Made by a program: the position numbers and the translations under genes
The notes under the pieces: model-generated
The model's database searches: none
Seen by the model: the letters and a program-made list of their open reading frames with translations, nothing else
What the model was told of the DNA's origin: nothing
Assembly (NCBI RefSeq): GCF_001194135.2
Contig: NC_068983.1
Location: forward strand, 157,173,729-157,230,699
DNA length: 56,971 nucleotides
Source: Octopus bimaculoides
Taxonomy: Eukaryota
Direction of reading: 5' to 3'
Shown here: positions 7,333-46,666 of the stretch, piece by piece
Layout: the number at the start of each line of letters is the position of its first letter
Position numbering within the stretch: position 1 is the stretch's first letter

Positions 7333-7347
7333 TCACATTTCATCCAA
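7333..7347 (-). CDS. XRCC5: Ku80 last coding exon (LDEM*)
   Basis: ttgtttaattgcag|TTG GAT GAA ATG TGA; equivalent to human LDMI*. Confidence 0.9.
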   Translation of the reverse strand: MDEM

Positions 7348-8484
7348 CTGCAATTAAACAAAACATGCATTATAAATAAATATTAGTCTTAAAATAATTG
7401 TTTTTTTACAAAAATTAATACACTTTTCTATTATTGGACTATAACATACACTAATATGTTATTATATTAAGGCAGCGAAATGGCAGAATCGTTAGCATGC
7501 CAGGCAAAATGCTTAGCAATATTTCGTCTGTCATTACATTCGAAGTTCAAATTCTGCTGAGATCAACTTTGCCTTTCATCCTTTCAGGATCAATAAATTA
7601 AGTACCAGTTGTATACTAGGGTCGATCTAATCTACTGGCCCCCTCCCCCAAAATTTTGGGCTTTGTGCCTAGAGTAGAAAACAATGTTATTATATTTGTC
7701 TTAAGAGGTCTAGTGAGAAATTTGATTCAGTTCCACTTCATAATAGACTATTTAGTTCTTAAAAACTATAAATTATCTACTCCAAACACATAAGCCCATA
7801 CAATAAATAATCTTTCTTAAAATGCAATTTCAGAGTTCTGTGTAGGCTTTACAACTCACCAAATCATCTGCAGAGCCCTCCATAGGCTGATCTGGTTTTG
7901 AAGACTCTTGGCTCTGGCTACCAGATTTGTCTTGTCCTGCATTCTCTTCAGATTTTTTAGTATCATGTGAATCATCTTTGCCCGAGAAAAGAATAATATC
8001 AAGAATCAGAATATTTCTTCCTATTAATGACAATCAATTTCCTATTCAAACAAAACTTTCTGACTGTAAGAAATTAAAAATGTGAAAAATCAACACACAT
8101 GAAACTCAATTGGTGAGGATCTGAGGCTTGGAAGTTGTCATACTATAACAACTGAACTAAGTGTTTAACTTGTCACCACTTACAATTTGTGAATATTACA
8201 AACTGTAATGTATACTTAGCGTTAATGCAACTTGAATTAATGTTGTATTGTTTAAGAGATTATGTTTTGTTATTGGAATATTATTGATAGTTCTCTTAAT
8301 ACTAAGAAGAAACATGACATAGAGAAAAGTTTAGAGGAAAAGAAATATTTGTTAACAATTAAAAAAAGTGTATGGAAGTGATTTATTAGATCAAACTGCT
8401 GATCTGCAAGACATATTGTTTATGACAGACACAAACAAATATCACTAATGCTAAAGCAGTGCTGTGAAAACACACACACACATA

Positions 8485-8569
<85 letters not shown>

Positions 8570-8584
8570 NNNNNNNNNNNNNNN

Positions 8585-8644
<60 letters not shown>

Positions 8645-11600
8645 GGGAGAATATACAAAAAATAACAACAGACGAGGACAGGTGGTGTAAATAACAAAAG
8701 TATATATTAGTATGACGCTCGGGAATACGGAAAGTCTTTGACGTTTCGAGCTACGCTCTTCAACAGAAAGAATACGGAGACAAGGAGAAAAACACGGAGA
8801 AAAAAAATTGAATAGTGTTCAGTCAACGGTCAATCATAATAATGTGTGTGTATGTATATATATATATATATATATACATACACACACACACACATTTAAA
8901 AAGGGCTTCCACATGGTTTTGACGACCAAATTTCAATTACAAAACATTCGTCATACCATGGTTATTCTCCTAAGATGCCAAACAATGGAATTGAACCCAA
9001 CACCAAATGGCTGCAAAGCCAACTTCTTCATCACACAACCATGTCTAATCTTATTCAAGAAAATTATACTTATACTTTTCCTAGAAGTACACATGTGTGT
9101 TAAATATTGTTAAATAAAAAAAAAAGAGATAATGGATATAATATTCAAAGAGAATCTTCAACTTGAAAAGACAGGCAAGTAAATATCATCATCATTATTT
9201 AACATCAATTGTCTATGCTCACATGGGCTGGACGGTTTGACCAGAGCTGGAACGCTGAGGAGCTGCGCCAGACTCCAGTCTGATTTGGCATAGTTTCTAT
9301 GGCTGGATAACCTTCCTAATGCCAACTACTTTACAGTGTGCTGGATGCTTTTACATGGCACCACATGGGTGTTTTTACAAGGCACTGCATGGGTGCTTTT
9401 ATGTGGCATTGCATGGGTGCTTTTACATGGCACTGTCACAAGTGCTTCCCACCACCAGAAGGACTGGTCTAAACACTTCTGCTTCAGAGTATGGGTCTTC
9501 TTGAGTACATGCAATTAATAACCAAATAAGAGAATGGACAATTGCTTTTTACATCAGATTTTTTTTTAAACTTATATGTTCTAGCTTAAATACTCTAAAG
9601 AAAATCATTTGTTTGCAACAAGCTTTCACATTAGCAACTATACGATAGCATTCTTAAACAATTTTGCATTTATTTCCAATGTTAGAATGTACTGGAATAA
9701 ATTTGCGTTAATTTTTGGCAAAGGTGTTTTCACAGTTAACCTCATTTCCTTATGTCAACCTGCCTGTGACATGTTCTAATTTCAAGATCATTTGTCCAGT
9801 TTTAATTAAGCAAGGATAATATACTTTTTTAAGATCAATAAAATGAAATACAAGACAACAGAAATTTTTTTTCACCTTTAAAATATTTTCCAGCAAGAAG
9901 AAGTTGTTTGAAATCTCCCTTTGGTGCATCATTGGGAGCCTGAAAGCATTGTTAAATAACAAACATTCAAAGAAATCTTAGTAGTATATATAGAGAAAAT
10001 AATTTGCTCAATATTGTTTCTAAAAAAATTTAGTAATATATGAAAATTTACAAATCCTTGAAAAATTAATTAGATTTAAACAATTTAGGTAATTACATTT
10101 GGATATGAAAAGTTGGTCTTAATCTCACTTAGGCCACGCAACATAGGTCATTCTATAACAATTTCAAAATCAGTAAAAATCAAGTTCATAAATTTCTCAG
10201 GTTGTGGCACTTTGTGAATATTTCTAACTAGGGAGTTTTATACCTGCTATGTGATATCAGAAAAGTTATCAATGGTTACATCAATGATAGGTAAAAAAAC
10301 AAAAATATTCTCTTTGCATTTTGGTAAGTAAATCCTGTTGTATGTTCATCTCTTCATACTGACTTTACAATCACTAAAAGGCCCAAACAATTTACAAAAG
10401 GGACTGGGACTTGCGGAGATTTGCTGTACTTGACAAGACAGGTCAAGCTAAGTAAAATCAGTCCATCCATACATAGAGGCATTCCTTTATGGCCACGACT
10501 CACTCCCTCTCCCAGGCGAGAGGTCTTTGTCTTGCAGGTGCTAGTGCCAAGTAAAATGCACTCATGCCGATGCCAAATAAGGTGCTATGTGAACACACCC
10601 ATACCAGTGGCACATAAAAAGCACACTCTGTAAAGTGGTTGGTGTTAGGAAGGGCATCCAATCATAGAAACTATGCCAAAACAGACAGTTGGAGCCTGGA
10701 CAGCTCTCTGACTGACCAGCTCTTGTCAAACCTTCCAACCCATATCATCATGAAAAACAGATGTTAAACGATGATGATGTGCTGGCAATAAAAAAATCAC
10801 AGTGCCTACAATCATTCTCCAACATCAACTGATCGTCACCAAGAAGAATCTTTGTGTGATATACAGTCTCTTTCATTATGGGCTTTTATATAAAGGTTGT
10901 CAGCCAAATATACTTGATTTTCAACTGGTGTCCTTGTAGTGAAAAAATAGGAATACTCCATCAGAAACAACGGTCATATTTACAGCTAACTTTACTTTCG
11001 AGTTCCATTCTTAATGCAGATGCACACACAAAGATCTTCGCCAAGATTTTCTTCTTTGTTCACAACTATTGCCAAAACCACCAAACTGGTCATTGTTGTC
11101 CAACTAGACAACTGCACTAGATGGTATTCCAGCCATCACTCTGAATAAATATGTTCTTGAGTTTTTCTCTTTTAACATTTTTATATTGCTGTCATATCCT
11201 GCTTACAATCATATCCAATGACATTTACTTCTATAACTGTCAACACACCACATTCAAATTCTGTACACAGGCTTTATGAGCCTCTAACTTCAAAACCTTC
11301 TACTCAGTCAGTATAACTTCCTTGTAAAGAAACATCTTGCATTGGAGATTTGACCATTTATTCACTTTCAAATATACTAAAATACAGGTCTATATATCTG
11401 AAGGGAACAAGTAAAAAAACCTCATTTCATCTATTTATGAATAATAAACATCCCAAACAGACTTAGCAATATCAGGTAAAATCTTAATGAAGAGTCTCCA
11501 TTTTTCCCATTTCCAAAGCTGTATTACAAAAGTTATATTTCTTCTTAAGTAAGCAACTGTTAACTCTTTCTAAAGCATAACATATTCTATATAAGAATTG

Positions 11601-14600
11601 TTTATATATACATATATATATTGAGAACAGTGCATCCACCACATTCATGACACATATATTACATTGAAACAGTACCAAAACTACATAATGCATTCACCCA
11701 TCCTACTCCTGCATCAATTTCTGTGTATAACCTATATATTAAATACATTGCATTTCTGTAACTTCTCTACACATATATTTTAAGTTAATATTTAAAAATG
11801 TTAAAGCACTTTCTTCGTGAAAATTATTATTCTAATACACACAAAAAATACAACTGTAACTTATCTATTACCAGTATTTCACATTTTACAAGACCATGAT
11901 TAAGAACAAATATATATATGATATTTTAAAGCATTTTACATCAATTTTTTTACTCACTAATTAAATTTGAATACTCTCACGTATTATTAAAGTGACATGT
12001 TATAACTAGAGGATTGTTCAAAATATTTACAGTAAAGACTATGTGATTTTCAATGTAAAAATAAAAAATATCACAGAAAATATTTTAGTAATTCTTGATA
12101 TTCTTAATAAAATACTAGTCCAGTTAATCAGATATAAAAATTTATATTTCTTCAATAAAAAAATATAGATGTAAGAAATACATTTAAAATTCTTTCTATT
12201 CCTATTTAATAGAGAGCAATAAATCAGAAATAGTGTGCATTTCTTTACCTCCTCAGAAGTCAAAGCTTTCATTTGAGACGAATCCATATCTAAGCTAAAA
12301 TAAAAGTAGTATATTCATTAACATTAAATAACATTTTTATTAAAATAGTTAACATGCACTGATATTACTGGAATGCAGTATTCTAAAATTTAGAATAAGA
12401 AATATAAATTATCTACAGGACAATCCAAAGATGAATTTGGGCTGGGGATAGTTTGAGAAAGACCAGGAAAATGAATTTACAAATTCTGCAATTTATCATA
12501 TGACAATACAGCCTTTATATAATTCACAAAAAATTGTAGAGCTTATTTAAGATCATCTCTGTGTACATCAGTATAACAATCTTTTCAATACAAAGAATGT
12601 TTGGTAGTTGATTAAGGTTACTCAAACCCTAAAAGGTACATGAAATGTTATGAAATAATTTTTTTTAATCCCTGTGTTATTTATGTAGCATTGAATTTTC
12701 TCTGATTATTCCCAAAAGTATAATTAAGTTGGTGAATTTTAACTTTAAATGGGTTCACAGTTAAGCTTATGTATAACTCTGTCAGGGTTGCTATCTAATT
12801 TGATAGCCATAAAATATACAGTGGATATTGCAAGGCAATAGGCATGAATGTAAATTTCTCTGAGTTGTAGTGCATCTAAACACTGTATACAATAAGTTCT
12901 GTGTTCTGAGTTCAAATGCCACCCAAGTCGACTTTGCCTTTTGTCCTTTCAGAGTCAACCATCTAACAGAGATAGACAAAGAACCTAGAGATAGACAAAG
13001 AACAAAACAGTTAGATATCTATAGTCTCAGTTGGTCACACTTGGGAATCCAGCCAGTAAGTTTAATAATGGTTGCTTCTGATAAGACCCTACAAAGGAGA
13101 TACTTGAGGTCTCTACTCTCAAAACCCTCCCAGGGATAATGGGAAGAGAAGAAGGGTGGATGCATGAGTATGTTTTGGAGGAACCGAAAAGAAATATTTT
13201 TAGAATATCAGTATTAAACTTACTTAATGCCAAACAGCTTTTCACCGGTCTTTTCTGTTTTATTGGGCTTCAAATTTTCAAGTGTGAAATTTTCTTTGAT
13301 TTTCTCCACAGCTTCTTTATTTTCAAAAAAAGATGCTCCATGTTTAGTTGGCAACTCAGGAATTGGTTTTGTAGATTCCAGTACTCTTTGTTCAAAACAC
13401 TGAGCCAAAATAACCAAAAACAAATTCAAATTAGAAATTATTTTAATGAATCAATAATATTAAGAATAATATTAAGAAAATACATTACTTTTTAAACAAT
13501 AATAAAAAAAAATAAAAAGTATCTTATCTGACTAATCTTCTGAACTATGTGCAGTTTCTTTCAAATGTGCATATCAATGTTAATATTAAGAACATCTGCA
13601 TAATGTAATGTTTAGCTGATAAAATAATTTTTCACTTAAGAAGAACAAGACAACATTAGCAGCAGTTCATTAAATAGTTAAGAGACCAAGACAATGGTTT
13701 CAAATGTTGGCACAAGGCCAGCAATTTCATAGGAGTGGGGTAAGTCAATTACATCAACCCCAATGTTCAACTGGTACTTATTTTATCAACCTCAAAAAGA
13801 TAAAAGGCAAAGTGGGCCCTGGCAGCATTTGAACTCAGAATATAAAGTTGGTGTAGTGACAATTCTGCCAGCTCACCACCTGTGACCAAAACAATATTAA
13901 CATCAATTTTTTTTTTTTAATTTACTTTATTAAACAATTATACATTTACTCCACTCATTTCTTTCATTTTCTACTGCAAAAATACTGACTAAAAGCAAAT
14001 CTTGTTGTAGATCACATTAATATCACATCAATTAATAGTGATTTCAAATTTTGGCACAAGGCCAGCAATTTCAGGGTAGGGGGTTAGTTGATTATTTCAA
14101 TCCCAGTGCTCAACTGGCACTTGTTTTATCGACCCCCAAAAGACAGAATATGAACGCCGAGCATTAGGATAGATAAAATGTTGCTAAAATTTAAGAATGA
14201 AGTAATAAACAATCAATAATTCATACCTGATAAAATTTCTGCAAAGATGGTGTAGATACGTATTTTGTATTTAAAAATTTGTGTTTTCCTTCATTACTAA
14301 ATAAAAATAAAATATTTGATTTATTATATCAAAATATTATAACAAGTCAACAATTTCTGAGAATAAATCAGTTTCAGACAGTGAAGATACAAAGATATCT
14401 TATTTATACAATTAAAATATATTTCTTTACATAACTTGTTGAGTGCCACAGACCAAATCCATGGCTGGTGCAAAGCCCCAACCAGACATAGGGTGACGTG
14501 GTGATCCCAACCAGACCTAGGGTAACGTGGAATGATGTTGTAGACAAGACTATTAGAGTGAAGAAACAGGCCTAGAAGGGCTGGAAGAATGGTTGTAGCA

Positions 14601-17600
14601 GAGAACTATATCAGGAGGGAGGCTAGAAGATAGGTATACTTAGCCAAGGGAGACGCAGAAAAGAGGAAGTTTACCAATGTGAGGACCAGAGGCTTGAGGT
14701 GTTCCGGATTGCAAGGCAAGTGTATCAGAGAAAATCGGGATGTGGTAGGAGAGAAATGCATTTGCATGGCTGATGGCTCCCTTGTAGTTAGTAATTCTGC
14801 AAAGAAGGGGGCTTGGAAGTGCCACTATGAAAAGTTACTAAATGTAGAGAATGCAGGAGAGAAGGACAGCCTGCCTAATGTGGACCCAACAAAGGGGCTG
14901 GTTATTCAAATTGACAGTAGCTTAGTAGATAAAGCGATTAAAGATATGAAGATAGGGGAAGCCTCCAGCCCATCAGGAATCACTGCTGAGATGCTTAAAG
15001 TATTTGGTGGAGTGGGGTATGACCTGATCACCCCGTATAATTAATCAGGTTGTCCACAAAGAAGTCATACCCAATGATTGATGTAGCAGCATTATAGTCA
15101 ACTGCTGCAAAGGTAATACCCTAGACAGAAATAATTACAGAGGCATCAAATCGCTGGACCAGGTGATGAAAGTTGCAAAAAGGGTGATAGCTCAATTAAT
15201 TAAAAAGAGAGTTAACATAGATGCGATGCAGTTTGGATTTGTGTCAAGAGAAGCATCACCAATGCTATCTTCCTGATGAGGCAACTGCAGGAGAAATATT
15301 TGGCCAAAAATAAACATTGTTGACATGGAGAAAGCCTTTGACAGGGTCCCCAACTACCTTATCTGGTGAGCAATGTGGAAGCTAGGGATAGATGAGTGGT
15401 TAGTGAGAGCTGTATAAGCCATGTACACGGATGCTGTTAATAAGTTATGAGTTGCCGATGAGTATATCAAAGAGTTTAATATACAAGTAGAAGTCAACCA
15501 GGGTTCAGTTCTTAGCCCCCTTTTATTTATCATGGTCTGCCAAGCTATAACTGAGGAATTTAAGACTGGCTGCACTTGGAAGGTTCTCTATGCTGATGAC
15601 CTTGTTCTTATTGCTGAATCACTACAAGAACAAGAGAAGAAATTTTAGGTATGGAAGCATGGATTGGAATCAAAGGGCCTTAGAGTTAATTTAGCAAAGA
15701 TCAAAGTGTTGATAAGTAGGAAAACAGACAAATCACAGATCTCTTCAGGGAGATGGCCCTGCTTGATATGTAGAAAAGGTGCCAGGAGAAACTCCATAAA
15801 GTGTACTCAGTGTAAGTTATGGACACATAAGAAGTGCAGCATTATCACTGGAAAACTAACAGAGAAAATAGTCTTTACGTGTGACAGATGTGCAGGTTCA
15901 TTAAACACCAGAAATGTTCAAAAAATAGATTCCTTCAAATGTCAGGGATGGATCCTTAGAAGTAGTAGACAGTTTCTGCTACTTAGGTGACCAAGTTAGT
16001 AGCGGGAGAGGTTGTTCCAAAAAGCATAGCTGCTAGAATAAGAATAGGCTGGGCAAAGTTCAGAGAACTACTACCTCTGTTAGTAACAAAGGGCCTCTCC
16101 TTCAAAGTGAAAGGCAGATTGTATGATGCCTGTAACAAATAGCTAAGCTACAGTGAGACATGGACTACGACTACTGAGGATATATGAAGATTTGAAAGAA
16201 ATGAAACCAGTATGCTCTGCTGGATGGGTAATGTCAGTGTGCATATACAACAGAGTATGATTTGAGAAAAAAAGCTGGGTATACGAGGCATCAGATATAG
16301 CCTGCAAGAGAGAAGACTGTGCTTTATGGCCATGTAATGCATATGAATGAAAAGTTGCATCAAGAGGTGATGATCTCTAATTGTAGAGGGAACATGAGGA
16401 AGGGGTATACCCAGGAAGACGTGGGATGAAAAGGTGAGAAAGAGACTCACTTCCTATGACAACCTCAAAAAGTGACATCTTTATTTCTCTTACTTTGCAT
16501 TGTCACCAAATGCAAAGGTACTGGTGCCATTCCAAACCTATTTCTACTTAATTATATCCCAATTCGTACACCAACAATTTTACAATACAGAATACCATCT
16601 ACCTCCTTTCTTGATAAATAAGCATGTCATATGTTAATATTGTTTACATATCAGGACTACATAATAACATTAATAAGAGAGGCCTCTATATAATTGCTGA
16701 ACTTGCAAGCAATAGCAGCCAAAACCTTCCTTAACCCTTCAGCATTCTGATTGCTCTGTCAAATGTAATGTTTATATATTCACATTGTTTGAATTAATGA
16801 TGCATTATCTCATAACTTTGAGACGTTGATGATACCATTGTTTACTTTTACAATGATATTGTAGCGTTTGTGTGAGTGGGTGCATCAGGCCGGTTTACAT
16901 ATAAAACAGGTAAAATATTTGGGCCAGATATGACCTGTTTAAATGCTAAAGGGTTAAACCACACCCTGAAGTCTTAAAAAAAATGAACATATTGGTCAAT
17001 ATAATCCTAGATAACACATTTTCTGGCATACAAGTCAAATTTTTCAGACCAAAATTTACAGCCAAAAAAAGGTGGATCAATTTATACACCACGACAATTT
17101 TGAAGGACGACAACTTTCATGTGAAATGCAGCAGGATTTGGAAAGATAGTGACAACATTTGAATGTTTGGACTACATGTTTGCACTATCTTCTACATCAA
17201 GTTGTATACCAGAAAATACAGTATATAAAAAGATCATGCTTGGAAATTCTTTGATCATAGATCTCCTCAATCAGGACTACCAAGGCTTAAGTAGCAAGAA
17301 CTATTTAAACCTTAATTTTGATAAGATTAAATGACAAAGTATAATAAACTCACGAAAATGTCATAGTGTCAATCAAGTTATCCATAGCCTTCAGCTGTGC
17401 ATCTGTAAAAAGATTTAAATGTAAATAATTATACCATTTAACACTTCATTAAATATTTACATTAATTCAAAAAATATCAGCTAACATTATCAAAAACTAC
17501 ATTAAGTGAGCTTCTAAGTAGCTGTTTAACCAGCTAAAAATAGCAGTCAAATTTCTCTCAAATCACACCCTCACCATCTTTAAAAAAGGGAAGGCATAGT

Positions 17601-19575
17601 CCTGGATACATACAAGAAAGACATAGCCGGAACTCCTTTGAGCTTAGGTCTGTTCATACAGGGCTGATCAATGACTAAACAACACTAAAGGATTCCAAAC
17701 TTACTTGATGGTTTGAACTTCTTCGGAGTGTCACAGCTATCCACTGGTAGTGGGTCAAATTCACAATTAAGTATATCTTCATAAAATGGTAATTCGTAAT
17801 ATATCATACACTGAAGAATTGAAAGAAAAAGAAATCAAATTACATGTAAACCACAATAGAAATATAAATTAAATAAACTATGGAAGTGTTGTTTGCAAGA
17901 AAAAACACAGGGAGAATACCTAGTGGATAAAAGAAAAGCTGTAATAGAGCAAAACAGACAAGGTGCATTGAGTAGAAATGATTGTTATACGGGTACAAAA
18001 ACTGATAGGTTGTAATAACAAATTCAAACATGGGAACAATGACATAGAAAATATCAGAGAAAAATCAGAGAATAGAAAAACAGATTGACAGAAACAATGA
18101 TAATAAATAAACATTAAAAAGAAAACTAGAAATATTAAAGCACAACTCAGCATTTAGCATTTACTGCAGTATATGCCATTTGTGTTGAAGAGATGGATAA
18201 ACCAGGTACCTAGAAACATTCTCAGTCATTGAGAAACCACAAGTATAAAAAGAACATTGACTGTCTTCTTCAATCTGTTAGTGATATATTGCCATACAGC
18301 AAAACTTATTCATATTACTTTAGACTTACATTAAGTTTACCCCCAATAATACATGTGTGCCTTCCTTCCAGTCTGCCTGTCTACATGTCTTTCATTTAAT
18401 AAATTCTCATGTTTATTTGCCATCCATTTGTCATCCACGTGGTACCAGTGAGTCACTACCAGATGAACCTGTCTGAGATTGTATCAACATTTCAATGGTA
18501 ACAAGAATTTTAGAACATTCCTGATACTCACAGCATACTTTCCTAACTCGATACTAAATCACTCGTATTAATACTCTCATGTAGAAAACTTGTAGAATAA
18601 TAATAGTTATCATAGTCGAAAATAAATATTTTCATACTGAAAATAAATGCTTTGCTGTTATAGTCATGCTTTTGCTGTAATCAATCTTATAATGGTGTTA
18701 TAGGAAAGTGGTTATACACCATTAGGTGTATACCCGCTTCCATACATTAAATTCTAGAAGAAACAACGGAACGCAGATTCTGATCCATCAACACAACAAT
18801 ATTTATTTACAGAGAAAATAGGCAGCACTTCGCCCTTTGGTTACTGAGACGCCGTCAATGATGTTGAGTGGTTATTTGTCTAGCTCCAGAGTAGGAATGT
18901 TGGAAAGAGCTGTCTCCAGAGTTGGAATGTTGGAGAGACTGCTTGACACGTCCAGGTTCATTGCCGGCCGGCCGAGAAAGAGAATGAATAAGGGCGCGAA
19001 ACTTGGATCTCTAATGCCCACGAGACTCTTCCCGTGTTCCTTCCGGAACTAATCTCTGCGCATGCGTGGATAAGCTTACCGGAAAGGTCATCTGCTAGTA
19101 AGGCGTTACTACACTGTCATTCATTTTCAACACAGGCTGACAGTACATTTGCTATTACTTGCAATGCACCACAGCCATAACGAAAAATAAAACTGTAGGT
19201 CATTAGAACCATTTTGCTTTTTTAATTCATTCATGGCCGTTGATCATTAACAACGTCGCCTCCCTGGCACTTGTACCAGTGGCACGTGAAAAGACATTCG
19301 AGCGAGATTGTTGCCAGTGCCGCTGGACTAGCTCCTCTGCAGATGGCACGTAAAATACACCATTTCCATCGTGGCCGTCGCCAGTACCGCCTGACTGGCC
19401 CTCGTGCCGGTGGCAAGTAAAACACCCACTACACTCTCGGAGTGGTTGGCGTTAGGAAAGGCATCCAGCTGTAGAAACTCTGCCAAATCAGATTGGAGCC
19501 TGGTGTCGCCTCCTGGTCCACCAGTCCTCAGTCAAATTGTCCAACCCATGCTAGCATGGAAAGCAGACGTTAAAC

Positions 19576-19613
<38 letters not shown>

Positions 19614-22600
19614 NNNNNNNNNNNNNNNNNNNNNNNNNNNNNNNNNNNNNNNNNNNNNNNNNNNNNNNNNNNNNNNNNNNNNNNNNNNNNNNNNNNNNNN
19701 NNNNNNNNNNNNNNNNNNNNNNNNNNNNNNNNNNNNNNNNNNNNNNNNNNNNNNNNNNNNNNNNNNNNNNNNNNNNNNNNNNNNNNNNNNNNNNNNNNNN
19801 NNNNNNNNNNNNNNNNNNNNNNNNNNNNNNNNNNNNNNNNNNNNNNNNNNNNNNNNNNNNNNNNNNNNNNNNNNNNNNNNNNNNNNNNNNNNNNNNNNNN
19901 NNNNNNNNNNNNNNNNNNNNNNNNNNNNNNNNNNNNNNNNNNNNNNNNNNNNNNNNNNNNNNNNNNNNNNNNNNNNNNNNNNNNNNNNNNNNNNNNNNNN
20001 NNNNNNNNNNNNNNNNNNNNNNNNNNNNNNNNNNNNNNNNNNNNNNNNNNNNNNNNNNNNNNNNNNNNNNNNNNNNNNNNNNNNNNNNNNNNNNNNNNNN
20101 NNNNNNNNNNNNNNNNNNNNNNNNNNNNNNNNNNNNNNNNNNNNNNNNNNNNNNNNNNNNNNNNNNNNNNNNNNNNNNNNNNNNNNNNNNNNNNNNNNNN
20201 NNNNNNNNNNNNNNNNNNNNNNNNNNNNNNNNNNNNNNNNNNNNNNNNNNNNNNNNNNNNNNNNNNNNNNNNNNNNNNNNNNNNNNNNNNNNNNNNNNNN
20301 NNNNNNNNNNNNNNNNNNNNNNNNNNNNNNNNNNNNNNNNNNNNNNNNNNNNNNNNNNNNNNNNNNNNNNNNNNNNNNNNNNNNNNNNNNNNNNNNNNNN
20401 NNNNNNNNNNNNNNNNNNACTTGGCTTGCCGGGTCTTCTCACGCACAGCACATTTCCAAAGGTCTCGGTCAGTAGTCATCGCCTCGGTGAGGCCCAATGT
20501 ACGAAGGTCTTGCCTCACCACCTCAGCCCAGGTCTTCCTGGGCCTACCTCTTCCACGGGTTCCCTCAACTGTTAGGGTGTGGCACTTTTTCACGCAGCTA
20601 TCCTCATCCATTCTCACCACATGTCCATACCAGCGCAATCATCTCTCTTGCACACCACAACTGATGCTTCTAATGTTCAGCTTTTCTCTCAAGATACTTA
20701 CACTCTGACGGTTTGGCAATTTAATTCTAGTGTTGGAACTGATAATATAACATGTACAAGATAGGAAGAATTTTAGGGTCATGATGCTTTCTTTATAATG
20801 GCTAGATTATTTGATTACATGTATCAGAAGCTTAACACCATATAAAAGTGATGAGATCAAAATGAGATCTGTTGATGGTAGTTATCTAAACTGACAACAA
20901 ATGGAATGCAGTAATCCTTCGCCGTATTGTGGTTCACCTATCACGTACTCAGTACATCACAGATTGTTCTGGCTAATATATAGGCACAGGAGTGGCTGTG
21001 TGGTAACTAGCTTGCTTACCAACCGCATGGTTCCAGGTTCAGTCCCACTGTGTGGCACTTTGGGAAAGTATCTTCTACTATAGCCTCAGGCCAACCAGAA
21101 CCTTGTGAGTGGATTTGGTAGACGGAAACTGAAAGAAGCCCGTCGTATATATATGTATGTATGTGCATGTATATGTTTGTGTGTCTGTGTTTGTCTCCCC
21201 CAACATCGCTTGACAACTGATGCTGGTGTGTTTATATTCCCGTAACTTAGTGGTTCAGCAAAAGAGACTGATGGAATAAGTACTAGGCTTACAAAGAATA
21301 AGTCCTGGGGTTGATTTACTCGACTAAAGGTGGTGCCCCACAGTCAAATGATTGAAACAAGTAAAAGTAAAAAAGAACATGTAAATTTATATCGCAGAAT
21401 CCTCAGTATATCATGGGTTTCTGCAGTCAATAATAATTTAGATTTTTTTAGATTTTAATTATTTCTGTGGGAGGTTTTGGAATGTAACACCTGTGATAGT
21501 CGAGGGATTACTGTAATTAAAAAATATGCAAGACATTAGCCTATGTATTCAATGATGTGAAAATGGGTAACATGTTTGGTACAAAGGTATTTCAAATTGA
21601 ATATAAAAGGTAAGCTAAATGAAATAAACTGGGATTTAAAAGGTCTTACATATGAAATGACATAAGAATCATGTCTTCAGAAAAAAAATCTACATTACAG
21701 ACGCTTCCTCTATAGAGAAACAGACCTACTGATGATGACAGCCAATCATTATAATAAAGAATAAATCTCCCTTACCTCATAATCATTTTTGATATGTGGT
21801 TTAAGACAACCAATTCGAGGTCCTGAACGTGCATCATAAACTCTTCTTACAATAGCAAGCATATTAGTTTCAAATAATGCATTAACCAAAGCTGAGAACG
21901 CAACAGATATTACCTTTAGGAAGAAAAAAAATAACATTTATATTTAGTATAAGAAAAACGTCATTTGAGATTTTAAAAATTTTTTAAAAAGAATAAGAAA
22001 AAACAAAATTAACATCAATGAAGAGAAACTAAGTGACTATAGATTGACGTATACATATAGATCTTCAAGAAAATACACCCACAACTTATAATTAACATTA
22101 TATCTTTTTTTTTATTACTCAACCCTCCTCACTGGCTTATCAATCTCTAACTCTCACTAAAACCCTGATGTTACTTTTCACTTCCCATCTATTACACACT
22201 TCCCTAACAATGTCCCTACTTTCTCTCAACAATAAACCTGTGTAACCCCAATAAAATCTGTCTTGAACCTTAATGAACCATCCAACCCATGCTGACATGG
22301 CAGATGAACTGATCCATTCCATTACTGGATCCACCTACTCAACCCACCTCGTTACCATTTCCACTTTGTCCACTCCCTCTCTTTTTCACACTAACCTTTA
22401 ACATTACTTATCCTCTTCACGTCTCCTATTCCCACCCCAACACTCTGACAAGGGAGTACCAAAGAGAAACAGGAGTTTCACAATATCATTTTAGTCACTT
22501 AATATTAAAGCGTGAACACCACTTGTAAACCTGTATTTTGCACATGGCAGCATCCTTGTAAGTTGTTTGAAGCTTGACAACTGCTTTGGCCGCCGTTTTC

Positions 22601-25600
22601 CACAGCAGAAAACAGAATTTCACAGAAGCACATTTTGTTCCTTCATTTCAGTCATTGCAAAAATCGATGAACAGAGGAGAAGCACTGCAAAACAAAGACA
22701 CACCACATGGCAGCACGACTCCACCCAATGACACTGGTCAGCAGACTGATGCCTGAGGGTCGCATCAAGAGGCTTCTAACAGCGGAAGCCTGAACTACAA
22801 TGGGCTTGTCCCACAGAGAATGTTCCTGGTCATTACCATCCTCTCACAAATTTATTCCTTTCTACCATCCTCCCTTTCATTTCACAAGCTACATGGTGAC
22901 CCCCAACTGCTGGTGCTACAACAAGCACCTACTACACTCTGTTTGGTAATCAATTCAAACAGTGACAACTCAGAGCCGAAGATGGCTCTTTTGTCTTGCT
23001 AAAGGCAAGGCAATCTCTGTAGTGCTGATATTACAAGAAAATGTGTCCAGTACACTCTGTAAAGTAGCTGATGTTATCCAGCTATAGAAACCTTTGACCA
23101 CTGAATCCTGTTGAATTATCTTGTAGGAAAGTGGTTATACACCATTAGGTGTACACCGCTTCCGTACATTAAATTTCTAGAAGAAACAACGGAATGCAGA
23201 TTCTGAACCATCAACACAACAATATTTATTTACAGAGGAAATAGGCAGCACTTTGCCCTTTGGTTGCTGAGACGCCGTCATTGATGTTGGTGGTTATTTG
23301 TCTAGCTCCAGAGTTGGAATGTTGGAAAGAGCTGTCTCCAGAGTTGGAAAGAGCTGTCTCCAGAGTTGGAAAGAGCTGTCTCCAGAGTTGGAAAGAGCTG
23401 TCTCCAGAGTTGGAATGTTGGAGACAGGCTGCTTGTACGTCTGAGCTCATTGCCGGCCGGCCGAGAAAGAGAATGAATAAGGGCGCGAAACTTGGATCTC
23501 GAATGACCACGCATGCGCACGAGACTCTTCCCGTGTTCCTTCCGGAACTAGTCCCTGCGCATGCATGGATAAGCTTACCGGAAATGTCTTCTGCTATTAA
23601 GGCGTTACTACAATCTGAAACATGCCAGCAAGGAAAGCAAACATAAAATGACAATGGTGGCAGTGACCATGGCAACAATAGTGACAACAATGATGACGAA
23701 TTTTGAATTATAATCTGAATCTTCAGAAGCAAATTACTTTATTATGAAAAGAAAAATATTCATTTTTTTCAATTATCCCAACAGATGCATTTAAATGCTG
23801 TGCAAAGCACTTTTTTCATTTACAAATGAAAACGTCTTTATTTTAATGGCAATAATTACAAAAATATTAAATAACATACTTGATCATTTGGTTCTGCTAT
23901 TACATACATAGTATTATCTCCCATGTAACTATAAGCTGGAACCTGCAGCAACAAAAAAAAAATAATGCAAATAATTTTACTTTTTATTGATTCTCTTAAC
24001 ATCATATATTTTATTTTTTACTTATTTCAGCCAGACTGAAGCCATGCTAAAGAACTTTAGTCAAACAAATCAACCTCAGTATTTACAGTATAGTCCCGCT
24101 TATTCATGGTTTGGCATTCATGGTCCCGGTTATTCTCGGAACTGGTAATTGTTCGTGGAAACAACTGCATATTCACAGAATTGTAAACATCGTCCGCAAT
24201 TTTTTATGGCATTTTTTCTGGCAATATATACTTTTCCACACATTTTAAGGCTAAATTATTAATAATAATATACTGTATTTGCCAGTTTACCGGACATCCG
24301 TTGACAGCTGAAGATCCCTCTAATTAGAATAGCCGTGCATCATGTCGCTTAATTTTTTTTTTTTCAAATACAAGTACACAGTATCTTGTATCTCTTATTC
24401 TTCCTTTCAATCAAAGCTTGCTAATTAGTATAGCGACTACCAGTGCATTTTTTAAAATTATCGCTACATTTGATCATGCACAATGTTTATTTCAACAGGA
24501 TAATTTTTAAGGTCATGAGCCAATGTAGCCTCATTGAAATTAGGTTACTTGCTGGTCCCTCTCTCTCTCATTATTATAGTATAGATTATATAGTATGTAG
24601 CATATGGTGCTTTCATTGACAACATAATAGCAACCTACTGCAGCGTAACTTTTACCTTCCCAGAACATATCCAGCAGTTGTGCCTTCTCGTGGAGCATCA
24701 TGACCTTTTTCTGGCGCTTAGGTTCACTGCCAGAAGTCTTAGAAGGTGTAGGGCGTTTGGGTGGCATCTTAGGGCTTTAATAATATGCTGCAAAAAACAC
24801 AGCACTCAACAAAATACTAGAGATAGCTATTGGACGCAGTTTTTCCAAAAAAAAATTTAGTTTGTATCAAGTGGTAATACAAACTAAATTTTTCAAAACC
24901 ATGATTATCTATAATCTCTGCTCAACCTCCCATTGGTGGTATGCGCATATCAGATGCAATAAAGATTTTTTTGTAGGTTTTTTTTCTTTGGAAAAACTGT
25001 GTCCAGTAGCTATCTCTAGTATTTTGTTGAGCGCTGTGTTTTTTGCAACATGTTATTAAAGCTCTAAGATGCCACCCAAATTCCCCTCACCTTCTAAGAC
25101 TTCTGGCAGTGAACCTAAGCACCAGAAAAAGGTTATGACACTCCATGAAAAGGCACAACTGTTGGATCACGAACATTGGCGGCATCAACAATGGAGGTTG
25201 ATAGTCTTCCTGATGAGCGTTGGTACTGCGTTGCCACCTCGGATGGTAGAGTGAGGGTGTGGAGTAGGAAGGGTGAATGCTACAGAGACACATGTATCAT
25301 GGAGAGAAACATGTAGGGTGGCCAAAGCATCATGATTTGGGGTATTATAGGCCTGAATCAGAGAATTGGGCCCCATGTGTTCCAAAATGTTGGTGCAGAC
25401 AGAGGGAATGGCACCACAACTCCAAAGATCTCACATTATACCTTTCTTCACACATCAACATAGCCACGTGTTCCAGCAGGACAATACTCCCTCCCACATG
25501 GCCCGGGTCACCATGCACTTCCTGCGTTGCCACAACATCAGAACCAAGACGTAGCCAGCTCTCAGCCTGGATTTGTACCCAACTGAACACTTGTGGGATG

Positions 25601-26883
25601 AAATCCAGAGACGGCTGAACCTAGTGGTCCCAAGGCTGACAACTAATGTGGAACTGCAGGCAGCTTTCCTCAGGGTGTGGGCATAGGTGCCAATGGCTTT
25701 TGTGAACTGCTTCATGTACTCCATGTACCAACGGTGTATGGCCGTTTTGAACACCAAGTGAGTGTATACACAGTTTTGAACATATCATGCCCTACAATCT
25801 CAATGTGCTGGATCCACCCACTACCATAATACATGACAACAAACCATAGACTGTGGTCAAGGTGCATCCAAGAAATTGACTTTATCAGATTTATCAAAAT
25901 TTATCTCTGACTAATGAAACTAAAACATATTTCACAGTCATGTTTCGCATTTCTTTTGCAGTTCAGTGTATAATGAAGGTATAAAAAAGGAATGTTAGAG
26001 TATTAGAGCAGAAGATAAAGTGAAGAATAATGAAATGCAGTTTGAATTTATGACAGGAAGATGAACAGATGATACAACTTTTATTGTAAGGCAATTGAGC
26101 CACAAAGGAGCCCCTGCGTGGTTGCTGAGGAGGAGGAGAAGAAGAATGCAGTAAATTAGCATTTTTATAATAAAACTATATTTGATAATATTCGTTGTTT
26201 TAGTGTGGGTAAGCATTAGTGCTCACCTTGTCAACCCAGATGACACATCCCTGTGATAAAGCCTACATAAAACCAAGACTTTGTATTTGAAAGTAAAACT
26301 CAGAGTAAACTACTGCAGCAAAGCTTACATCTGATAAGAGTAAGTTACTAACAGTTTTACTTACATTTTCCTTGGATGTAAACCCAAGTACTGTAAAACA
26401 TTTTGTGCTTTTATATTTTTCACTCTCTTCAGAGAGAGGAACAAGAGTAGAGCCATAGTAAAAACCTAAGAAAAAATTAAAATATGTCATTTTATGACAC
26501 AATAGAACAAAATATTACACAGCACAATAAAATATTCATACATTAAGATTGTAAAATGAGTTTATACCTTAAATCTTTCCTGAAAAGAAAATATATATTT
26601 TTTTAGAAAAATACTGAATTTAAATTTTTAAAACAAAGAAAAGGGTTGTTGTATAGTAACCCTCTTCTTTGTTGTACTTTTAATATCTTTCTCCAAGTTG
26701 AAATGACAAAGACATATAGGCGTAGGAGTGACTGTGTGGTAAGTAGCTTGCTTACGAACCACACGGTTCCGGGTTCAGTCCCACTGCGTGGCACCTTGGG
26801 CAAGTGACATCTACTACAGCCTCATGCCGACCAAAGCCTTGTGAGTGGATTTGGTAGACGGAAACTGAAAGAAGCCCGTCGTA

Positions 26884-26922
<39 letters not shown>

Positions 26923-28092
26923 GCGTATATGTTTGTGTGTCTGTGTTTGTCCCCACAACACCGCTTGACAACCGATGCTGGTGTGTTTACGTCCCCATAA
27001 CTTAGCAGTTTGGCAAAAGTGACCGATAGAATAAGTACTAGGCTTACAAAGAATAAGTCCTGGAGTCAATTTGCTCAACTAAAGGCGGTGCTCTAGGATG
27101 GCCACAGTCAAATGACTGAAACAAGTGAAAGAGTAAAAGAGTATGTACATAAAACAGCCCAAGTGATCTTTTTCATTTTAAGTCTTTTTCTGCTACATTG
27201 TGTGCACTCTCTACAACCAAGGCACACCAATTCTACAACACCACTCCATTACATATCATCACAGCTACCCCTTGCATATATCAAGTAATACTTTTAATGA
27301 TCAATTACTTTCAGCTCTTATACTCCATGTTTTGCAAACAACTTGCACATGCAAATACTACCAGTCGAAAGCTCTGCATACTGGAAGCCAACAAGTGTAT
27401 GGGGTCACCAGGAGAGAATGCGTGCCATTTCAGGGCCTACTTCTTGACAGCATCATTGCGCACTGGCCCCACCTCATTGATATGTGACTTCACTTGCTAG
27501 ATCAACTGGTTATCAAATAAAGCTCAATATTCTTCTAGCCATCGCTCATCTCTTTTTAACCAAATCCCATGGCAAGCCTTTTCCACTGCAGTTTGGATAT
27601 CGGTCATGGCAGTATTTACTTTACTATGAATTAGGCCTAATGATAACAACAGTCACCTAACACTGTGTCCCAACAAATTCTCTACATCCAACTTCGATTG
27701 GAAAATGCTCTACTTTCCAGCCTGCATCTTCACATTCCTCAAAGAGGTTTACATAACGGTCAGTCTTTCAAGCCCAAGCGGCATCCATGTTATCTTCATG
27801 AGGAACCATTAACTAGACTAGATTCACCACTTTCTTTCTTTCACACCACATTAAAATGTCCCTTTTTTGTCATAACTAGGATGGGAAGGAGTCCCTGGCA
27901 CCCTGGTGAATCTGCAGCCACTTCCCAATAGCCGTTCCACTTTTCATTGCTCAGAGGAAGTTTCTTCTTCTTGAAACGGATCTGCTGTCCTGAGCACATG
28001 AAGGTAATGAAATCTCTGGTCGGTACTCATTTTATATATTTTAAATCTATTTTGAATACAATCTTTAGAATTTAATGTACAATACCAAAAAC

Positions 28093-28126
<34 letters not shown>

Positions 28127-31100
28127 GTTTAACGTCCGCCTTCCATGCTAGCATGGGTTGGACGATTTGACTGAGGACTGGTGAAACCGGATGGCAACAC
28201 CAGGCTCCAATCTAATTTGGCAGAGTTTCTACAGCTGGATGCCCTTCCTTACGCCAACCACTCAGAGAGTGTAGTGGGTGCTTTTACGTGTCACCTGCAT
28301 GAAGGTCAGTCAGGCGATACTGGCAACGGCCACACTCGAAATGGTGTCTTTTATGTGCCACCCACACAAGCCAGTCCAGGGGCACTGGCAACGATCTCGC
28401 TTGAAAATCCTACGGAGGCCAGTCAGGCAGTACTAACATTGATTATTATATTCTAAAACTCTGATAGACCTTATCACTTTGCTCATGCTGGTCTCTATGG
28501 CATGAAGGCAGTGAATTAAAAGTTCACTTTATGCCCCAATAGCTCAATGCCATCATTATTTCTAAACCAATGAGTTGTAATCAAAATGATATGGCTTTAG
28601 AATGTACTGTACAATTCAAAATTTCTACATTTATACAGAATTGTTAATATATGCCAAAAAGCAAAGGGGTTTTACCTTTTAATCCCTGGTTGACCAGCAA
28701 TGAATATAATTTAAAATACAAATTTACATAATATTAATTACATTTATACTATAATAAAGAAAGCTGCTTACTATTAGTTTGGTTTATGTAATTTTTATTA
28801 ACAGTAAGCAATTATTAAAGTCTATGTTATCTAGACAATTTTTATAAATTTCAATTTTAATATATTTTTATCAAAATGTGGTTTCTGAATATGTTTTATT
28901 ATTAAGGATTTCAAAACTAATTTTTATTCACTATGACACAGTGTTTTTTTAATATCTAATGCTAAAATATTTGCAATGCTATTTCTAGAAATTATAAGTT
29001 TAATCCAGCATCAGCCAAATTATGTTGATTCCAGTATGCTTTCATATTTGTTGGGTGTTGTTGAAGAAATAGGAAGCTAGATAAAGAAAGTAGTTTTAAT
29101 ATACTTATTGTTGTGAGGCATAACTATAGAAGGTGCCCCACTATCACCAGATTTGTTTCCTTATAACTTTCTGAAAAATGTATATTTTGCAATGAAATTT
29201 CCTACAAACACATTTCAGATAGTGTAGATTACAATTATATCACAATTTGTTGTGTATAAGAAATATCAGCTTGCTTGGAAACAAATAAAGATTGGTGACA
29301 AGAAGGGCATCCTGCTATAGTAAATCTGCATCAATGAATTCCATCTGACCCATGCAAACAAGAAAAATCGGGCATTAAAACAATGATGATGGTAGTGGTG
29401 GTGGTCTTTATGATAAAATTACTTGCATGTAAACTTAAAAATAAAACCAAAATAGCAAAATTACCAGGAATAGTGTCCTCATGCTCAATTTCTGTTTCAT
29501 TTTCATCATTCAAATGCAAAGTTCTTGCTTCTTTGAGTGCAGCATCTTGATCATTAGCAAAAACTTTCTTCCAGCTTTGAGCAGGCTTGTAACTTTTCAA
29601 CTAAATGAAACAACAGAATAAACATAAAGTTGAATTTCGTTCAAATAATTGGAATAATTGTTAATACAGTTCAGTCAATAAATCATCTAAATTCAATTAC
29701 AGTAACTCAGAGGAGCTGTCTGACTTCCATGCTAGTGGCCTGTAAATAGCACCATTAGAACGTAATCGCTACCAGTGTTGCCTTCCAGCACTTGTGCTGG
29801 TGGCACGCTAGAAAATCATTCGAGCGAGGTCATTGCCAGTGCCGCTGGACTGGCTCCGGTGCAGGTGGCACGTAAAAAACACCTTTTGAGCGTGGCCGTT
29901 GCCAGTACTGTGTGACTGGCCCTCGTGCCGGTGGCACGTAAAAGCACCCACTACACTCTCAGAGTGGTTGGCATTAGGAAGGGCATCCAGCTGTAGAAAC
30001 TCTGCCAGATCAGATTGGAGTCTGGTGCAGCCTTCTGGCTTGCCAGTCCTCAGTCAAATCGTCCAACCCATGCTAGCATGGAAAGCGGACGTTAAACGTT
30101 GATGATGATGATGAGGAGAGCTAAAAATAACTGGTAAATTAATGACAAAATATGAACAGCAAAGTAAATACTCTACACCATCCTAGTCTGTTGTCATATA
30201 GTAATGAGTTCAAATCCTACTAAGGTCTACTTTATTTCTTCAGGTTTGATCAAACAAGCCTTATTTTACTGAGTATCAATTTATCACCACAATGGCACCT
30301 AGAGTTACAGAAGAGCTTGGGGTTGGCTCTAATTTCAAGTGACTTATTTTCTTATGCTAATGTGAACAAATATTTTAAAATGTATATCAAATACTCGAGG
30401 TCTAAATCTAATCATTACCATCGTTTAACGTCCGCTTTCCATGCTGGCATGGGTTGGATGGTTTGACTGAGGACTAGTGAACCAGAGGCTGCACCAGGCT
30501 CAATCTGATCTGCCAAAGCTTCTACAGCAGGATGCCCTTCCTAACACCAACCACTCTGAGAGTATAGTGGGTGCTTTTTATGTGACACCAGCATGAGGGC
30601 CAGTCAGGCGGTTCTGGCAACGACCATGCTCAAAAGGTGTTTTTTACATGCTACCTGCACAGGAGCCAGTCCGGCAGCACTGGCAATGACCACGCTTGAA
30701 TATTTTTTCACGTGCCACCAGCATAAGTCCAGTAAGGCAACACTGGTAACGATCACGCTCGAATAGTGCTTTTTACATGCCACCAGCACGGAAGCCAATC
30801 CATGGCCCTGGCAATGATCACGCTCGGATGTACATTTAACGCTCCAGTGGCACGAGTGCCAATCGGCGGTACTGTCATCAGCCACATCAGCGATCTGCTT
30901 TATCCATAAAAATAGACTATACACATTGGGTTCCAAATAAATGGAGTATTAACCCCAGTGAAAGTTTCCTGCTCACCAAGAATATAAATCTCGATAATGG
31001 CTTGAAATTTTTTTTCATTATTTTGAAGTGCTAATCAGCTATGTTTAACCCCTTCATTACTATGTTTCTTTTGAGATGCTCTGGTTTCTTTCAATTAATT

Positions 31101-40488: not shown

Positions 40489-40534
<46 letters not shown>

Positions 40535-45631: not shown

Positions 45632-45678
<47 letters not shown>

Positions 45679-46627: not shown

Positions 46628-46666
46628 GTTTGTGTTTTCTTCGGTTTGGGATTTGTAAAGTCTCAT
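46628..46666 (-). CDS. XRCC5: Candidate Ku80 first coding exon (MRLYKSQTEENTN)
   Basis: ATG at 46666, 13 codons, phase-0 donor AAC|gtgagc, just downstream of the E2F cluster. No sequence homology support. Confidence 0.3.

What the first reader, a model, noticed from the sequence alone, without database searches (positions are those of the whole stretch)
7333..9939. Ku80 appears to have lost most of its C-terminal helical domain but kept the DNA-PKcs-binding tail
Seen: after exon 9876-9939 (ends phase 1) I find no credible exon until 7860-7975/8020 (starts phase 1), which encodes a low-complexity S/E/K/Q/D linker ending MEGSADDL|LDEM*. The protein is about 600-625 aa versus 732 aa in human. 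Knowledge (recalled): human exons 17+18 (110+97 nt, about residues 612-681) form a phase 1-1 cassette encoding most of the globular CTD, and the last about 12 residues (EGGDVDDLLDMI) recruit DNA-PKcs. Inference: clean in-frame loss of this cassette would give a Ku80 with a flexible tether and intact kinase-recruiting helix, a natural separation-of-function variant.
Basis: partly seen in the sequence, partly recalled or inferred. Interest (0 to 1): 0.75.

Follow-up and report, generated by a model that had tools for sequence, protein, structure and literature searches.

The report
Octopus Ku80 lacks its globular tail domain
The DNA-repair protein Ku80 of octopuses has lost the two exons that encode most of its globular C-terminal domain but keeps the short acidic tail that in humans binds the kinase DNA-PKcs. 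This is a real change shared by at least three octopod species, not an assembly artefact.

Summary
The window holds XRCC5/Ku80 of Octopus bimaculoides on the minus strand: 19 coding exons, 48476 to 7333, 602 aa, identical to the public NCBI protein.

- **Splicing.** RNA contigs from three studies, and 56 raw reads from three further runs, join exon 9939-9876 directly to exon 7975-7860. No read shows another partner.
- **The gap.** The gap at 8570-8584 lies in an intronic (TA)n(CA)n microsatellite. That stretch is contiguous in the O. sinensis assembly.
- **Domain content.** Pfam finds no Ku_PK_bind domain in O. bimaculoides, O. sinensis or Argonauta hians. Two decapodiform Ku80s, one from Sepia esculenta, score 101-106 bits.
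- **What was lost.** Octopods join the flanking exons directly. No relic of the lost exons is detectable in the intron of any of the three species.
- **What remains.** The tail (E-G/N-SADDLLDEM) is 10/11 identical between Octopus and Argonauta. The first CTD helix is also kept (13/16 identical). AlphaFold2 predicts residues 504-596 as disordered.
- **Open points.** An O. bimaculoides DNA-PKcs sequence appears in a published tree. Binding of the tail to DNA-PKcs is inferred, not tested.

This is a new variant of a known protein, of moderate interest.

The parts
7333..48476 (-). XRCC5/Ku80 gene of Octopus bimaculoides. The coding part has 19 exons and gives 602 aa. The 3' UTR continues below 7333 to at least 7200.
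   Evidence: The spliced translation is identical to P0001, 'X-ray repair cross-complementing protein 5 [Octopus bimaculoides]'. Exons 5-19 are supported by RNA contig pieces and joints. Exons 1-4 were placed by exact protein mapping only.
12249..12294 (-). Exon 16 (46 nt), part of the linker after the Ku core (LDMDSSQMKALTSEE).
   Evidence: RNA joints 12294->13224 and 9938->12248. It corresponds to oyster exon 16.
9876..9939 (-). Exon 17 (64 nt, starts in phase 0, ends in phase 1): APNDAPKGDFKQLLLAGKYFK. It is the only surviving piece of the globular CTD, namely its first helix.
   Evidence: Canonical splice sites. Raw-read depth is 16-30 with zero depth in the flanking intron. It aligns with TPVEDFKMLLSSGKDF of the decapodiform protein P0004 and NPAEDFRILV of the hummingbird (Heliangelus) Ku80, and with NPVENFRFLV of mouse Ku80.
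9880..9924 (-). Codons for PKGDFKQLLLAGKYF, the remnant of CTD helix 1.
   Evidence: AlphaFold2 predicts a helix at residues 544-558, at low confidence. By direct count, 13 of 16 residues are identical between Octopus and Argonauta (sequences).
7976..9875 (-). Intron 17 (1900 nt), where the two CTD exons (113/110 + 97 nt in other animals) should lie. No coding relic is detectable.
   Evidence: tblastn with CTD peptides of eight species gives only noise (E>0.1) here and in the orthologous introns of O. sinensis and Argonauta. RNA depth is near zero except over a repeat at 9265-9344.
8486..8660 (.). Compound (TA)n(CA)n microsatellite that contains the assembly gap 8570-8584.
   Evidence: Sequence.
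7860..7975 (-). Exon 18 (116 nt, starts in phase 1, ends in phase 0): a low-complexity linker, DDSHDTKKSEENAGQDKSGSQSQESSKPDQPM, followed by EGSADDL. It corresponds to oyster exon 20 (143 nt).
   Evidence: RNA contigs and 56 raw junction reads. Exon map.
7860..7880 (-). Codons for EGSADDL, the first part of the acidic C-terminal motif.
   Evidence: Aligns with the conserved ADDLLD tail of Ku80 across 51 animals.
7348..7859 (-). Intron 18 (512 nt). It carries a repeat at about 7458-7715 that is heavily represented in RNA.
   Evidence: Joint 7347->7860 appears in three contig runs and in 14 raw reads.
7333..7347 (-). Exon 19, coding part: LDEM plus the stop codon. This is the end of the DNA-PKcs-binding motif.
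   Evidence: The same intron position (DDL|LD..) is seen in abalone. In O. sinensis, Argonauta and oyster the mapped penultimate exon likewise ends at DDL/EDL, but the short last exon was not itself placed there.

Best explanation
This is the orthologous Ku80 (XRCC5) gene of Octopus bimaculoides.

**What happened (shown).** In the octopod lineage, after the split from decapodiform cephalopods and before Octopus and Argonauta diverged, the gene lost two adjacent exons. In other animals these are 110-113 nt and 97 nt long, are flanked by phase-1 introns, and encode the middle helices of the globular Ku80 C-terminal domain (Pfam Ku_PK_bind, human residues about 595-704). Because the pair is a phase 1-1 cassette of about 210 nt, the flanking exons splice together in frame. 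The start of the next exon, which encoded the last helix of the domain, then drifted into low-complexity S/E/K/Q sequence.

**What is left.** After the Ku core comes a tether of about 100 residues that is predicted to be disordered. It carries a conserved remnant of helix 1 and a conserved acidic terminal helix, EGSADDLLDEM.

**How it likely works (inferred).** The Ku70/80 ring binds DNA ends as usual. The terminal helix still docks on DNA-PKcs, as residues 720-732 do in human. The contacts made by the globular domain are absent, and the tether is about half the human length.
For: - **Splicing and gene model.**: three contig runs, 56 raw junction reads, and no alternative partner.
- **Identity.** The model is identical to the NCBI O. 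bimaculoides XRCC5 protein of 602 aa.
- **Domain absent.** Pfam finds Ku and Ku_N, a weak Ku_C, and no Ku_PK_bind in O. bimaculoides, O. sinensis or Argonauta. Sepia esculenta and a second decapodiform score 106 and 101 bits. Against solved structures, octopus matches human Ku80 only at 418-511, while Sepia matches 584-730 plus 1RW2 and 1Q2Z.
- **Exon structure.** Oyster has exons of 73 | 113 | 97 | 143 nt, abalone 73 | 113 | 97 | 134 and swallow 70 | 110 | 97 | 68+72. Octopods have only 64 or 61 | 116 or 110.
- **No relics, gap explained.**
- **Phylogeny.** A cephalopod clade is recovered in 493 of 500 neighbour-joining bootstraps. P0039 comes from run SRR20545817, which is Sepia esculenta.
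- **Uniqueness.** In an exhaustive HMMER search of 1.84 billion representatives, only the octopod proteins align through to residue 602 among the best 150 listed.
- **Conservation and disorder.** The tail and helix 1 are conserved while the linker diverges. AlphaFold2 gives pLDDT below 50 for residues 504-596, with helices at 544-558 and 595-601.
- **Kinase present.** An O. bimaculoides DNA-PKcs sequence was used in a published tree (PMC8021618).
- **Roles in human.** The roles of residues 720-732 and 595-704 are taken from PMC10657183 and PMC8224183.
Against: - No functional data exist. Binding of the octopus tail to octopus DNA-PKcs is inferred from motif conservation alone.
- The presence of PRKDC rests on a figure legend in one paper. 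I could not check it with these tools.
- The octopod Ku80 core evolves faster than the decapodiform one: 40-42% versus 51-56% identity to other molluscs. That could mean general relaxation of constraint rather than a tuned variant.
- The timing of the loss is bracketed by only three octopods and two decapodiforms. Vampyroteuthis, cirrate octopods and Nautilus were not sampled.
- The AlphaFold2 model is of moderate quality overall (mean pLDDT 64.8).
Confidence: 0.85

Rival explanations
1. Assembly or annotation artefact: the CTD exons exist but are hidden in the under-sized gap at 8570-8584 or were missed by the reader.
For: A gap does lie in the intron, and its length is only estimated.
Against: Mature mRNA joins 9876 to 7975 in contigs of three runs and in 56 raw reads. 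Contig coordinates leave no room for extra sequence. The gap is flanked on both sides by one microsatellite that is contiguous in O. sinensis. Two other octopod assemblies have the same exon structure and ungapped introns.
Confidence: 0.01
2. Alternative splicing: a minor isoform includes cassette exons that restore the domain, and the short form is only the dominant isoform.
For: Assembled contigs drop rare variants. Only about 6% of each raw run was read.
Against: No joint or overhang other than 9876->7975 was seen. The 3 non-junction reads simply continue into the intron. tblastn finds no CTD-like coding potential in the intron of any of the three octopods. The NCBI models for O. sinensis and Argonauta also lack the exons.
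Confidence: 0.02
3. Decay under relaxed constraint: the Ku80 to DNA-PKcs axis is being dismantled in octopods. On this view the domain loss is one step, and the retained tail has no DNA-PKcs role (it may bind another partner, or nothing).
For: The whole octopod Ku80 core is markedly more diverged than the decapodiform one. The Ku_C arm scores below the Pfam cut-off in both Octopus species. The linker is shortened and of low complexity.
Against: The 11-residue tail is 10/11 identical between Octopus and Argonauta, while the adjacent roughly 30-residue linker is only about one-third identical. It is also almost identical to the decapodiform tail (SAEDLLDEM). An O. bimaculoides DNA-PKcs sequence is reported (PMC8021618). 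The open reading frame and splicing are intact, and the gene is expressed in all runs examined.
Confidence: 0.12

Closest known systems
Human Ku80 / XRCC5 (732 aa; PDB 1JEY core, 1Q2Z/1RW2 CTD, 6ZHA holoenzyme)
   Same: It has the same vWA (Ku_N) and beta-barrel (Ku) core and the same arm region (aligned to residues 418-511). It has the same acidic terminal motif (EGGDVDDLLDMI versus EGSADDLLDEM). The exon-intron layout matches that of other animals, compared here in oyster, abalone and a bird rather than in human itself.
   Different: It lacks the globular helical domain (human 595-704) except for its first helix. The C-terminal region after the core is about 100 aa instead of about 190 aa, and the protein is 602 aa instead of 732 aa.
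Decapodiform cephalopod Ku80 (Sepia esculenta transcript P0039, 727 aa; P0004, 726 aa)
   Same: These are the closest relatives outside octopods (neighbour-joining clade in 493/500 bootstraps). They share the DVSPSMC and ADFxDALIVAMDHLQT motifs and a near-identical tail, SAEDLLDEM.
   Different: They keep a complete Ku_PK_bind domain (101-106 bits). Their core is also less diverged from other molluscs.
Ku80 of lineages without DNA-PKcs, such as budding yeast Yku80 (own knowledge)
   Same: No globular Ku80 C-terminal domain.
   Different: Those proteins also lack the acidic DNA-PKcs-binding tail, and their genomes lack PRKDC. Octopus keeps the tail, and a DNA-PKcs sequence is reported for it.
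Engineered human Ku80 C-terminal truncations used to study DNA-PKcs recruitment (own knowledge; roles summarised in PMC10657183 and PMC8224183)
   Same: They separate the contribution of the extreme C-terminus from that of the rest of the C-terminal region.
   Different: As far as I recall, laboratory constructs usually remove the tail or the whole C-terminal region. The octopod protein is the converse: the globular domain is removed and the tail retained, and it has been maintained by selection across octopod species.

Membership tests
Ku80 / XRCC5 (Ku70/80 family) | N-terminal vWA-like alpha/beta domain (Pfam Ku_N, PF03731) | tested here: met
   84.2 bits against a cut-off of 20.6, residues 7-152.
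Ku80 / XRCC5 (Ku70/80 family) | Central beta-barrel DNA-binding domain (Pfam Ku, PF02735) | tested here: met
   124.4 bits, residues 230-430, full profile coverage. Also aligned to human Ku80 chain residues 418-511.
Ku80 / XRCC5 (Ku70/80 family) | C-terminal arm (Pfam Ku_C, PF03730) | tested here: inconclusive
   15.4-17.3 bits in the two Octopus species, below the cut-off of 23. Argonauta scores 25.1 bits, above it. The region aligns well by eye with other Ku80s.
Ku80 / XRCC5 (Ku70/80 family) | Orthology: groups with Ku80 of related animals and shares their exon-intron structure | tested here: met
   Cephalopod clade in 493/500 bootstraps. Exons 1-17 match oyster exon for exon in order, and nearly all are of the same or similar length.
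Metazoan Ku80 with full C-terminal region | Globular helical C-terminal domain (Pfam Ku_PK_bind, PF08785; human 595-704) | tested here: not met
   No hit at E<=1 in three octopod proteins, or at E<=10 on the C-terminal 213 aa. The positive controls score 101-107 bits. No match to 1Q2Z or 1RW2. The two encoding exons are absent.
Metazoan Ku80 with full C-terminal region | Extreme C-terminal acidic motif (human 720-732, EGGDVDDLLDMI) that binds DNA-PKcs | tested here: met
   EGSADDLLDEM lies at the C-terminus and aligns with the conserved ADDLLD consensus of 51 animal Ku80s. This test is by sequence only.
DNA-PK holoenzyme partner | PRKDC (DNA-PKcs) present in the same genome | not testable with these tools
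   The window holds only XRCC5. Literature: an O. bimaculoides DNA-PKcs sequence appears in the tree of PMC8021618, Fig. 2B legend.
DNA-PK holoenzyme partner | Physical binding of the Ku80 tail to DNA-PKcs and stimulation of the kinase | not testable with these tools
   This needs biochemistry.

The most novel reading that the evidence does not exclude
Octopods may be a natural separation-of-function experiment for DNA-PK. With the globular Ku80 domain gone but the tail kept, DNA-PKcs would still be recruited. Assemblies that lean on the Ku80 C-terminal region, such as the domain-swap DNA-PK dimer proposed to favour end resection, would be altered or lost. That would shift how octopod cells process DNA ends. 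The conserved orphan helix (DFKQLLLAGKYF) might then act as a short binding motif of its own.
Probability: 0.15. Interest if true: 0.65.

Novelty: new variant of a known kind. Interest (0 to 1): 0.42.

Why it matters
What the globular Ku80 C-terminal domain does, as opposed to the last 12 residues, is still debated in the field of non-homologous end joining. Its location in the holoenzyme was long disputed, and it features in the domain-swap dimer (PMC8224183, PMC10657183).

A whole animal order has lived for a very long time with the tail but without the domain. That suggests the domain is not essential for viability or for whatever the tail does. It also offers ready-made proteins (octopus versus cuttlefish Ku70/80 and DNA-PKcs) for comparative biochemistry and cryo-EM.

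The case is also a clean example of domain loss by removal of a symmetric-phase exon pair.

It does not change the general picture of Ku. Lineage-specific domain losses are common, and the short protein is already in public databases, though I found no paper that remarks on it.

Tried and rejected
- I worked around both with sub-stretches.
- **Failed scripts.** An ab initio scan for the missing exon 4 gave only noise and retrotransposon ORFs. Two scripts timed out and one failed on a label. All were redone.
- **Relic search.** The search for relic CTD exons in the window and in three octopod introns was negative.
- **Unidentified organism.** The species behind P0004 could not be identified, because no paper cites its runs. 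Only P0039 could be tied to Sepia esculenta.
- **Literature limits.** The supplement of PMC8021618, which would give the octopus DNA-PKcs accession, is not held. A literature search for Ku80/XRCC5 with octopus or cephalopod found no paper that discusses this loss.
- **Ideas considered and rejected.** Hidden exons in the gap, a minor CTD-containing isoform, and a pseudogene. The last is ruled out because the reading frame is intact, the gene is expressed, and the architecture is conserved in three species.
Full report
**What is in the window.** The region belongs to a minus-strand gene that tblastn with a recalled human Ku80 sequence identified as XRCC5/Ku80. I rebuilt the gene from RNA evidence. 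Read laying on sub-stretches gave contig pieces and joints for exons 5 to 19, all with canonical GT-AG sites and one continuous reading frame. A homologue search then returned 'X-ray repair cross-complementing protein 5 [Octopus bimaculoides]', 602 aa. Mapping that protein back onto the window reproduces my exons and adds exons 1-4. The result is 19 coding exons from 48476 to 7333. The window is therefore O. bimaculoides, and the short protein is already the public annotation.

**Checking the observation.** Exon 17 (9939-9876, 64 nt) ends in phase 1 and exon 18 (7975-7860, 116 nt) starts in phase 1. The last exon begins at 7347 and encodes LDEM plus the stop. Transcript contigs from three independent studies cover 7200-7347 and 7860-7979. 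They then continue with AAAATATTTTCCAGCAAGAAGAAGTTGTTT, the reverse complement of the end of exon 17; the four bases AAAG fit either side. In the 2665-nt contig, the 106 nt between the pieces on 13224 and 7979 are fully used by exon 16 (46 nt) and exon 17 (60 nt after the shared AAAG), so nothing else is spliced in. In raw reads of three further runs, 22, 20 and 14 reads stop at 7979 with that same overhang, at agreement 1, 0.96 and 1. Only 2, 0 and 1 reads run on into the intron. Depth beside exon 17 is zero. The acceptor is 7975, not 8020.

**The assembly gap.** The gap at 8570-8584 is in intron 17, inside a compound (TA)n(CA)n microsatellite. The orthologous intron of O. sinensis (1633 nt, no N) aligns with this intron at 82-91% identity in three blocks that cover all but two short stretches at the simple repeats. 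It is contiguous across the same microsatellite between the same flanks. The gap therefore hides repeat units, not exons, and it is irrelevant to the mRNA.

**What is missing.** Pfam finds Ku_N, Ku and a weak Ku_C in the octopus protein but no Ku_PK_bind. This holds at E<=10 on the C-terminal 213 aa, where my recalled human control scores 107 bits. O. sinensis and Argonauta hians behave the same way, while two decapodiform proteins score 106 and 101 bits. Against solved structures, the octopus C-terminus matches human Ku80 only over 418-511. The Sepia C-terminus matches 584-730 and the NMR structures 1RW2 and 1Q2Z of the CTD. Alignments show that the three octopods lack the block from just after 'DF..L...GK.F' to just before the acidic tail. 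AlphaFold2, run with a 51-sequence alignment, gives pLDDT below 50 for residues 504-596. It predicts a lone helix at 544-558 and a terminal helix at 595-601, so no folded domain is predicted there. The model is of moderate quality overall (mean pLDDT 64.8).

**How it was lost.** I mapped exons in genomic loci of the oyster Crassostrea virginica, the abalone Haliotis cracherodii and the swallow Hirundo rustica. After the exon homologous to octopus exon 17 (73, 73 and 70 nt, ending in phase 1) come two exons of 113+97, 113+97 and 110+97 nt. Next comes the exon that ends in ..DDL (143 and 134 nt in the molluscs, split into 68+72 nt in the bird). The pair is a phase 1-1 cassette of 207-210 nt. In O. 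bimaculoides, O. sinensis and Argonauta the flanking exons (64/61/64 nt and 116/110/110 nt) are adjacent. tblastn with CTD peptides of eight species finds no relic in the introns of the three octopods (1.9, 1.6 and 4.6 kb). The 5' part of exon 18, which elsewhere encodes the last helix (..LITK.E.E.S.V..EEA..FL), is low-complexity sequence in octopods.

**When it was lost.** P0039 (727 aa, complete domain) is encoded in run SRR20545817, a Sepia esculenta larval transcriptome. P0004 (726 aa) is 77% identical to it, but its organism could not be identified. A neighbour-joining tree on 560 shared columns groups these two with the octopods in 493 of 500 bootstraps. The loss therefore happened on the octopod branch, before the divergence of Octopus and Argonauta. 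In an exhaustive HMMER search of 1.84 billion representatives, only the octopod proteins align through to residue 602 among the best 150 listed. The alignment to P0004 stops at residue 542. No second octopod-like Ku80 appears.

**What is conserved.** The tail is EGSADDLLDEM in both Octopus species, ENSADDLLDEM in Argonauta and DSAEDLLDEM in decapodiforms. The roughly 30 residues before it are only about one-third identical between Octopus and Argonauta. The helix-1 remnant PKGDFKQLLLAGKYFK is 13/16 identical in Argonauta. This pattern argues for selection on the tail and, unexpectedly, on the orphan helix. The octopod core as a whole is more diverged: 40-42% identity to other molluscs against 51-56% for decapodiforms.

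**Likely mechanism.**
- *Shown:* the gene is expressed, correctly spliced and conserved in architecture across octopods, and it lacks the globular domain while keeping the terminal motif.
- *From the literature:* human residues 720-732 bind DNA-PKcs directly. The globular part (595-704) is a separate module of the Ku80 C-terminal region, and that region mediates the domain-swap DNA-PK dimer (PMC10657183 and PMC8224183). An O. bimaculoides DNA-PKcs sequence exists (PMC8021618).
- *Inferred:* octopus Ku70/80 loads on DNA ends normally and tethers DNA-PKcs through a disordered arm of about 100 residues ending in the acidic helix, without the contacts of the globular module. Whether this changes synapsis or end processing is unknown.

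**Comparison and novelty.** By core domains, phylogeny and exon structure it is a true Ku80 orthologue. It fails the Ku_PK_bind feature of metazoan Ku80 and passes the tail-motif feature. Ku80s without any C-terminal region are known from lineages without DNA-PKcs (own knowledge). The octopod combination, with the tail kept and the domain lost, is a variant I could not find described. The sequences themselves are public. I rate it a new variant of a known kind, of moderate interest.

Noticed in passing
window 7458-7715 (intron 18): A short repeat is very heavily represented in RNA, with word depths up to about 60,000. It shows many A>G differences on the + strand (for example 7519, 7562, 7589). 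These may reflect diverged genomic copies of a SINE-like element or A-to-I editing of repeat RNA.
   Followed up: no
window 9265-9344 (intron 17): A second repeat-derived RNA signal appears on both strands with several mismatches. It has no joints to the Ku80 exons, so it is not an exon.
   Followed up: partly
window 36400-37850, 41000-42500, 50800-52100, 19530-20640: Fragments of reverse-transcriptase / LINE-like ORFs (motifs such as FGFVPGRSTTDAIF and YADDL) lie in Ku80 introns and upstream of the gene. Two of them abut assembly gaps.
   Followed up: no
window 2847-3188 (-): An ORF with an integrase-core-like motif (DLVGPWP...YILTCIDRFTRWPEA) runs into a TACG/TATG microsatellite. It is probably a retroelement remnant downstream of Ku80.
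   Followed up: no
window 12249-12294 and 13224-13399 (exons 16, 15): The linker after the Ku core lacks the basic K-K-x-K stretch seen in oyster (SVKKMKMDD) and mouse (AAKKYKTE). In human Ku80 this stretch is the reported nuclear localisation signal (own knowledge). Decapodiforms also have only a weak version (TKNM).
   Followed up: no
whole gene; P0001 versus P0039: The octopod Ku80 core evolves faster than the decapodiform core: 40-42% against 51-56% identity to other molluscs over 560 shared columns. Octopus and Argonauta are only 65% identical.
   Followed up: partly
L015 (Argonauta hians) 3445-13005: The NCBI Argonauta model lacks the 63-nt exon 10 (PAYSYMGDNTMYVIAEPNDQ in Octopus) as well as the N-terminal exons. 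This may be an annotation miss in a 9.5-kb intron or a real difference.
   Followed up: no
window 9880-9924: The orphan first helix of the lost domain (DFKQLLLAGKYF) stays conserved in all three octopods although its domain partners are gone. No explanation was tested.
   Followed up: partly
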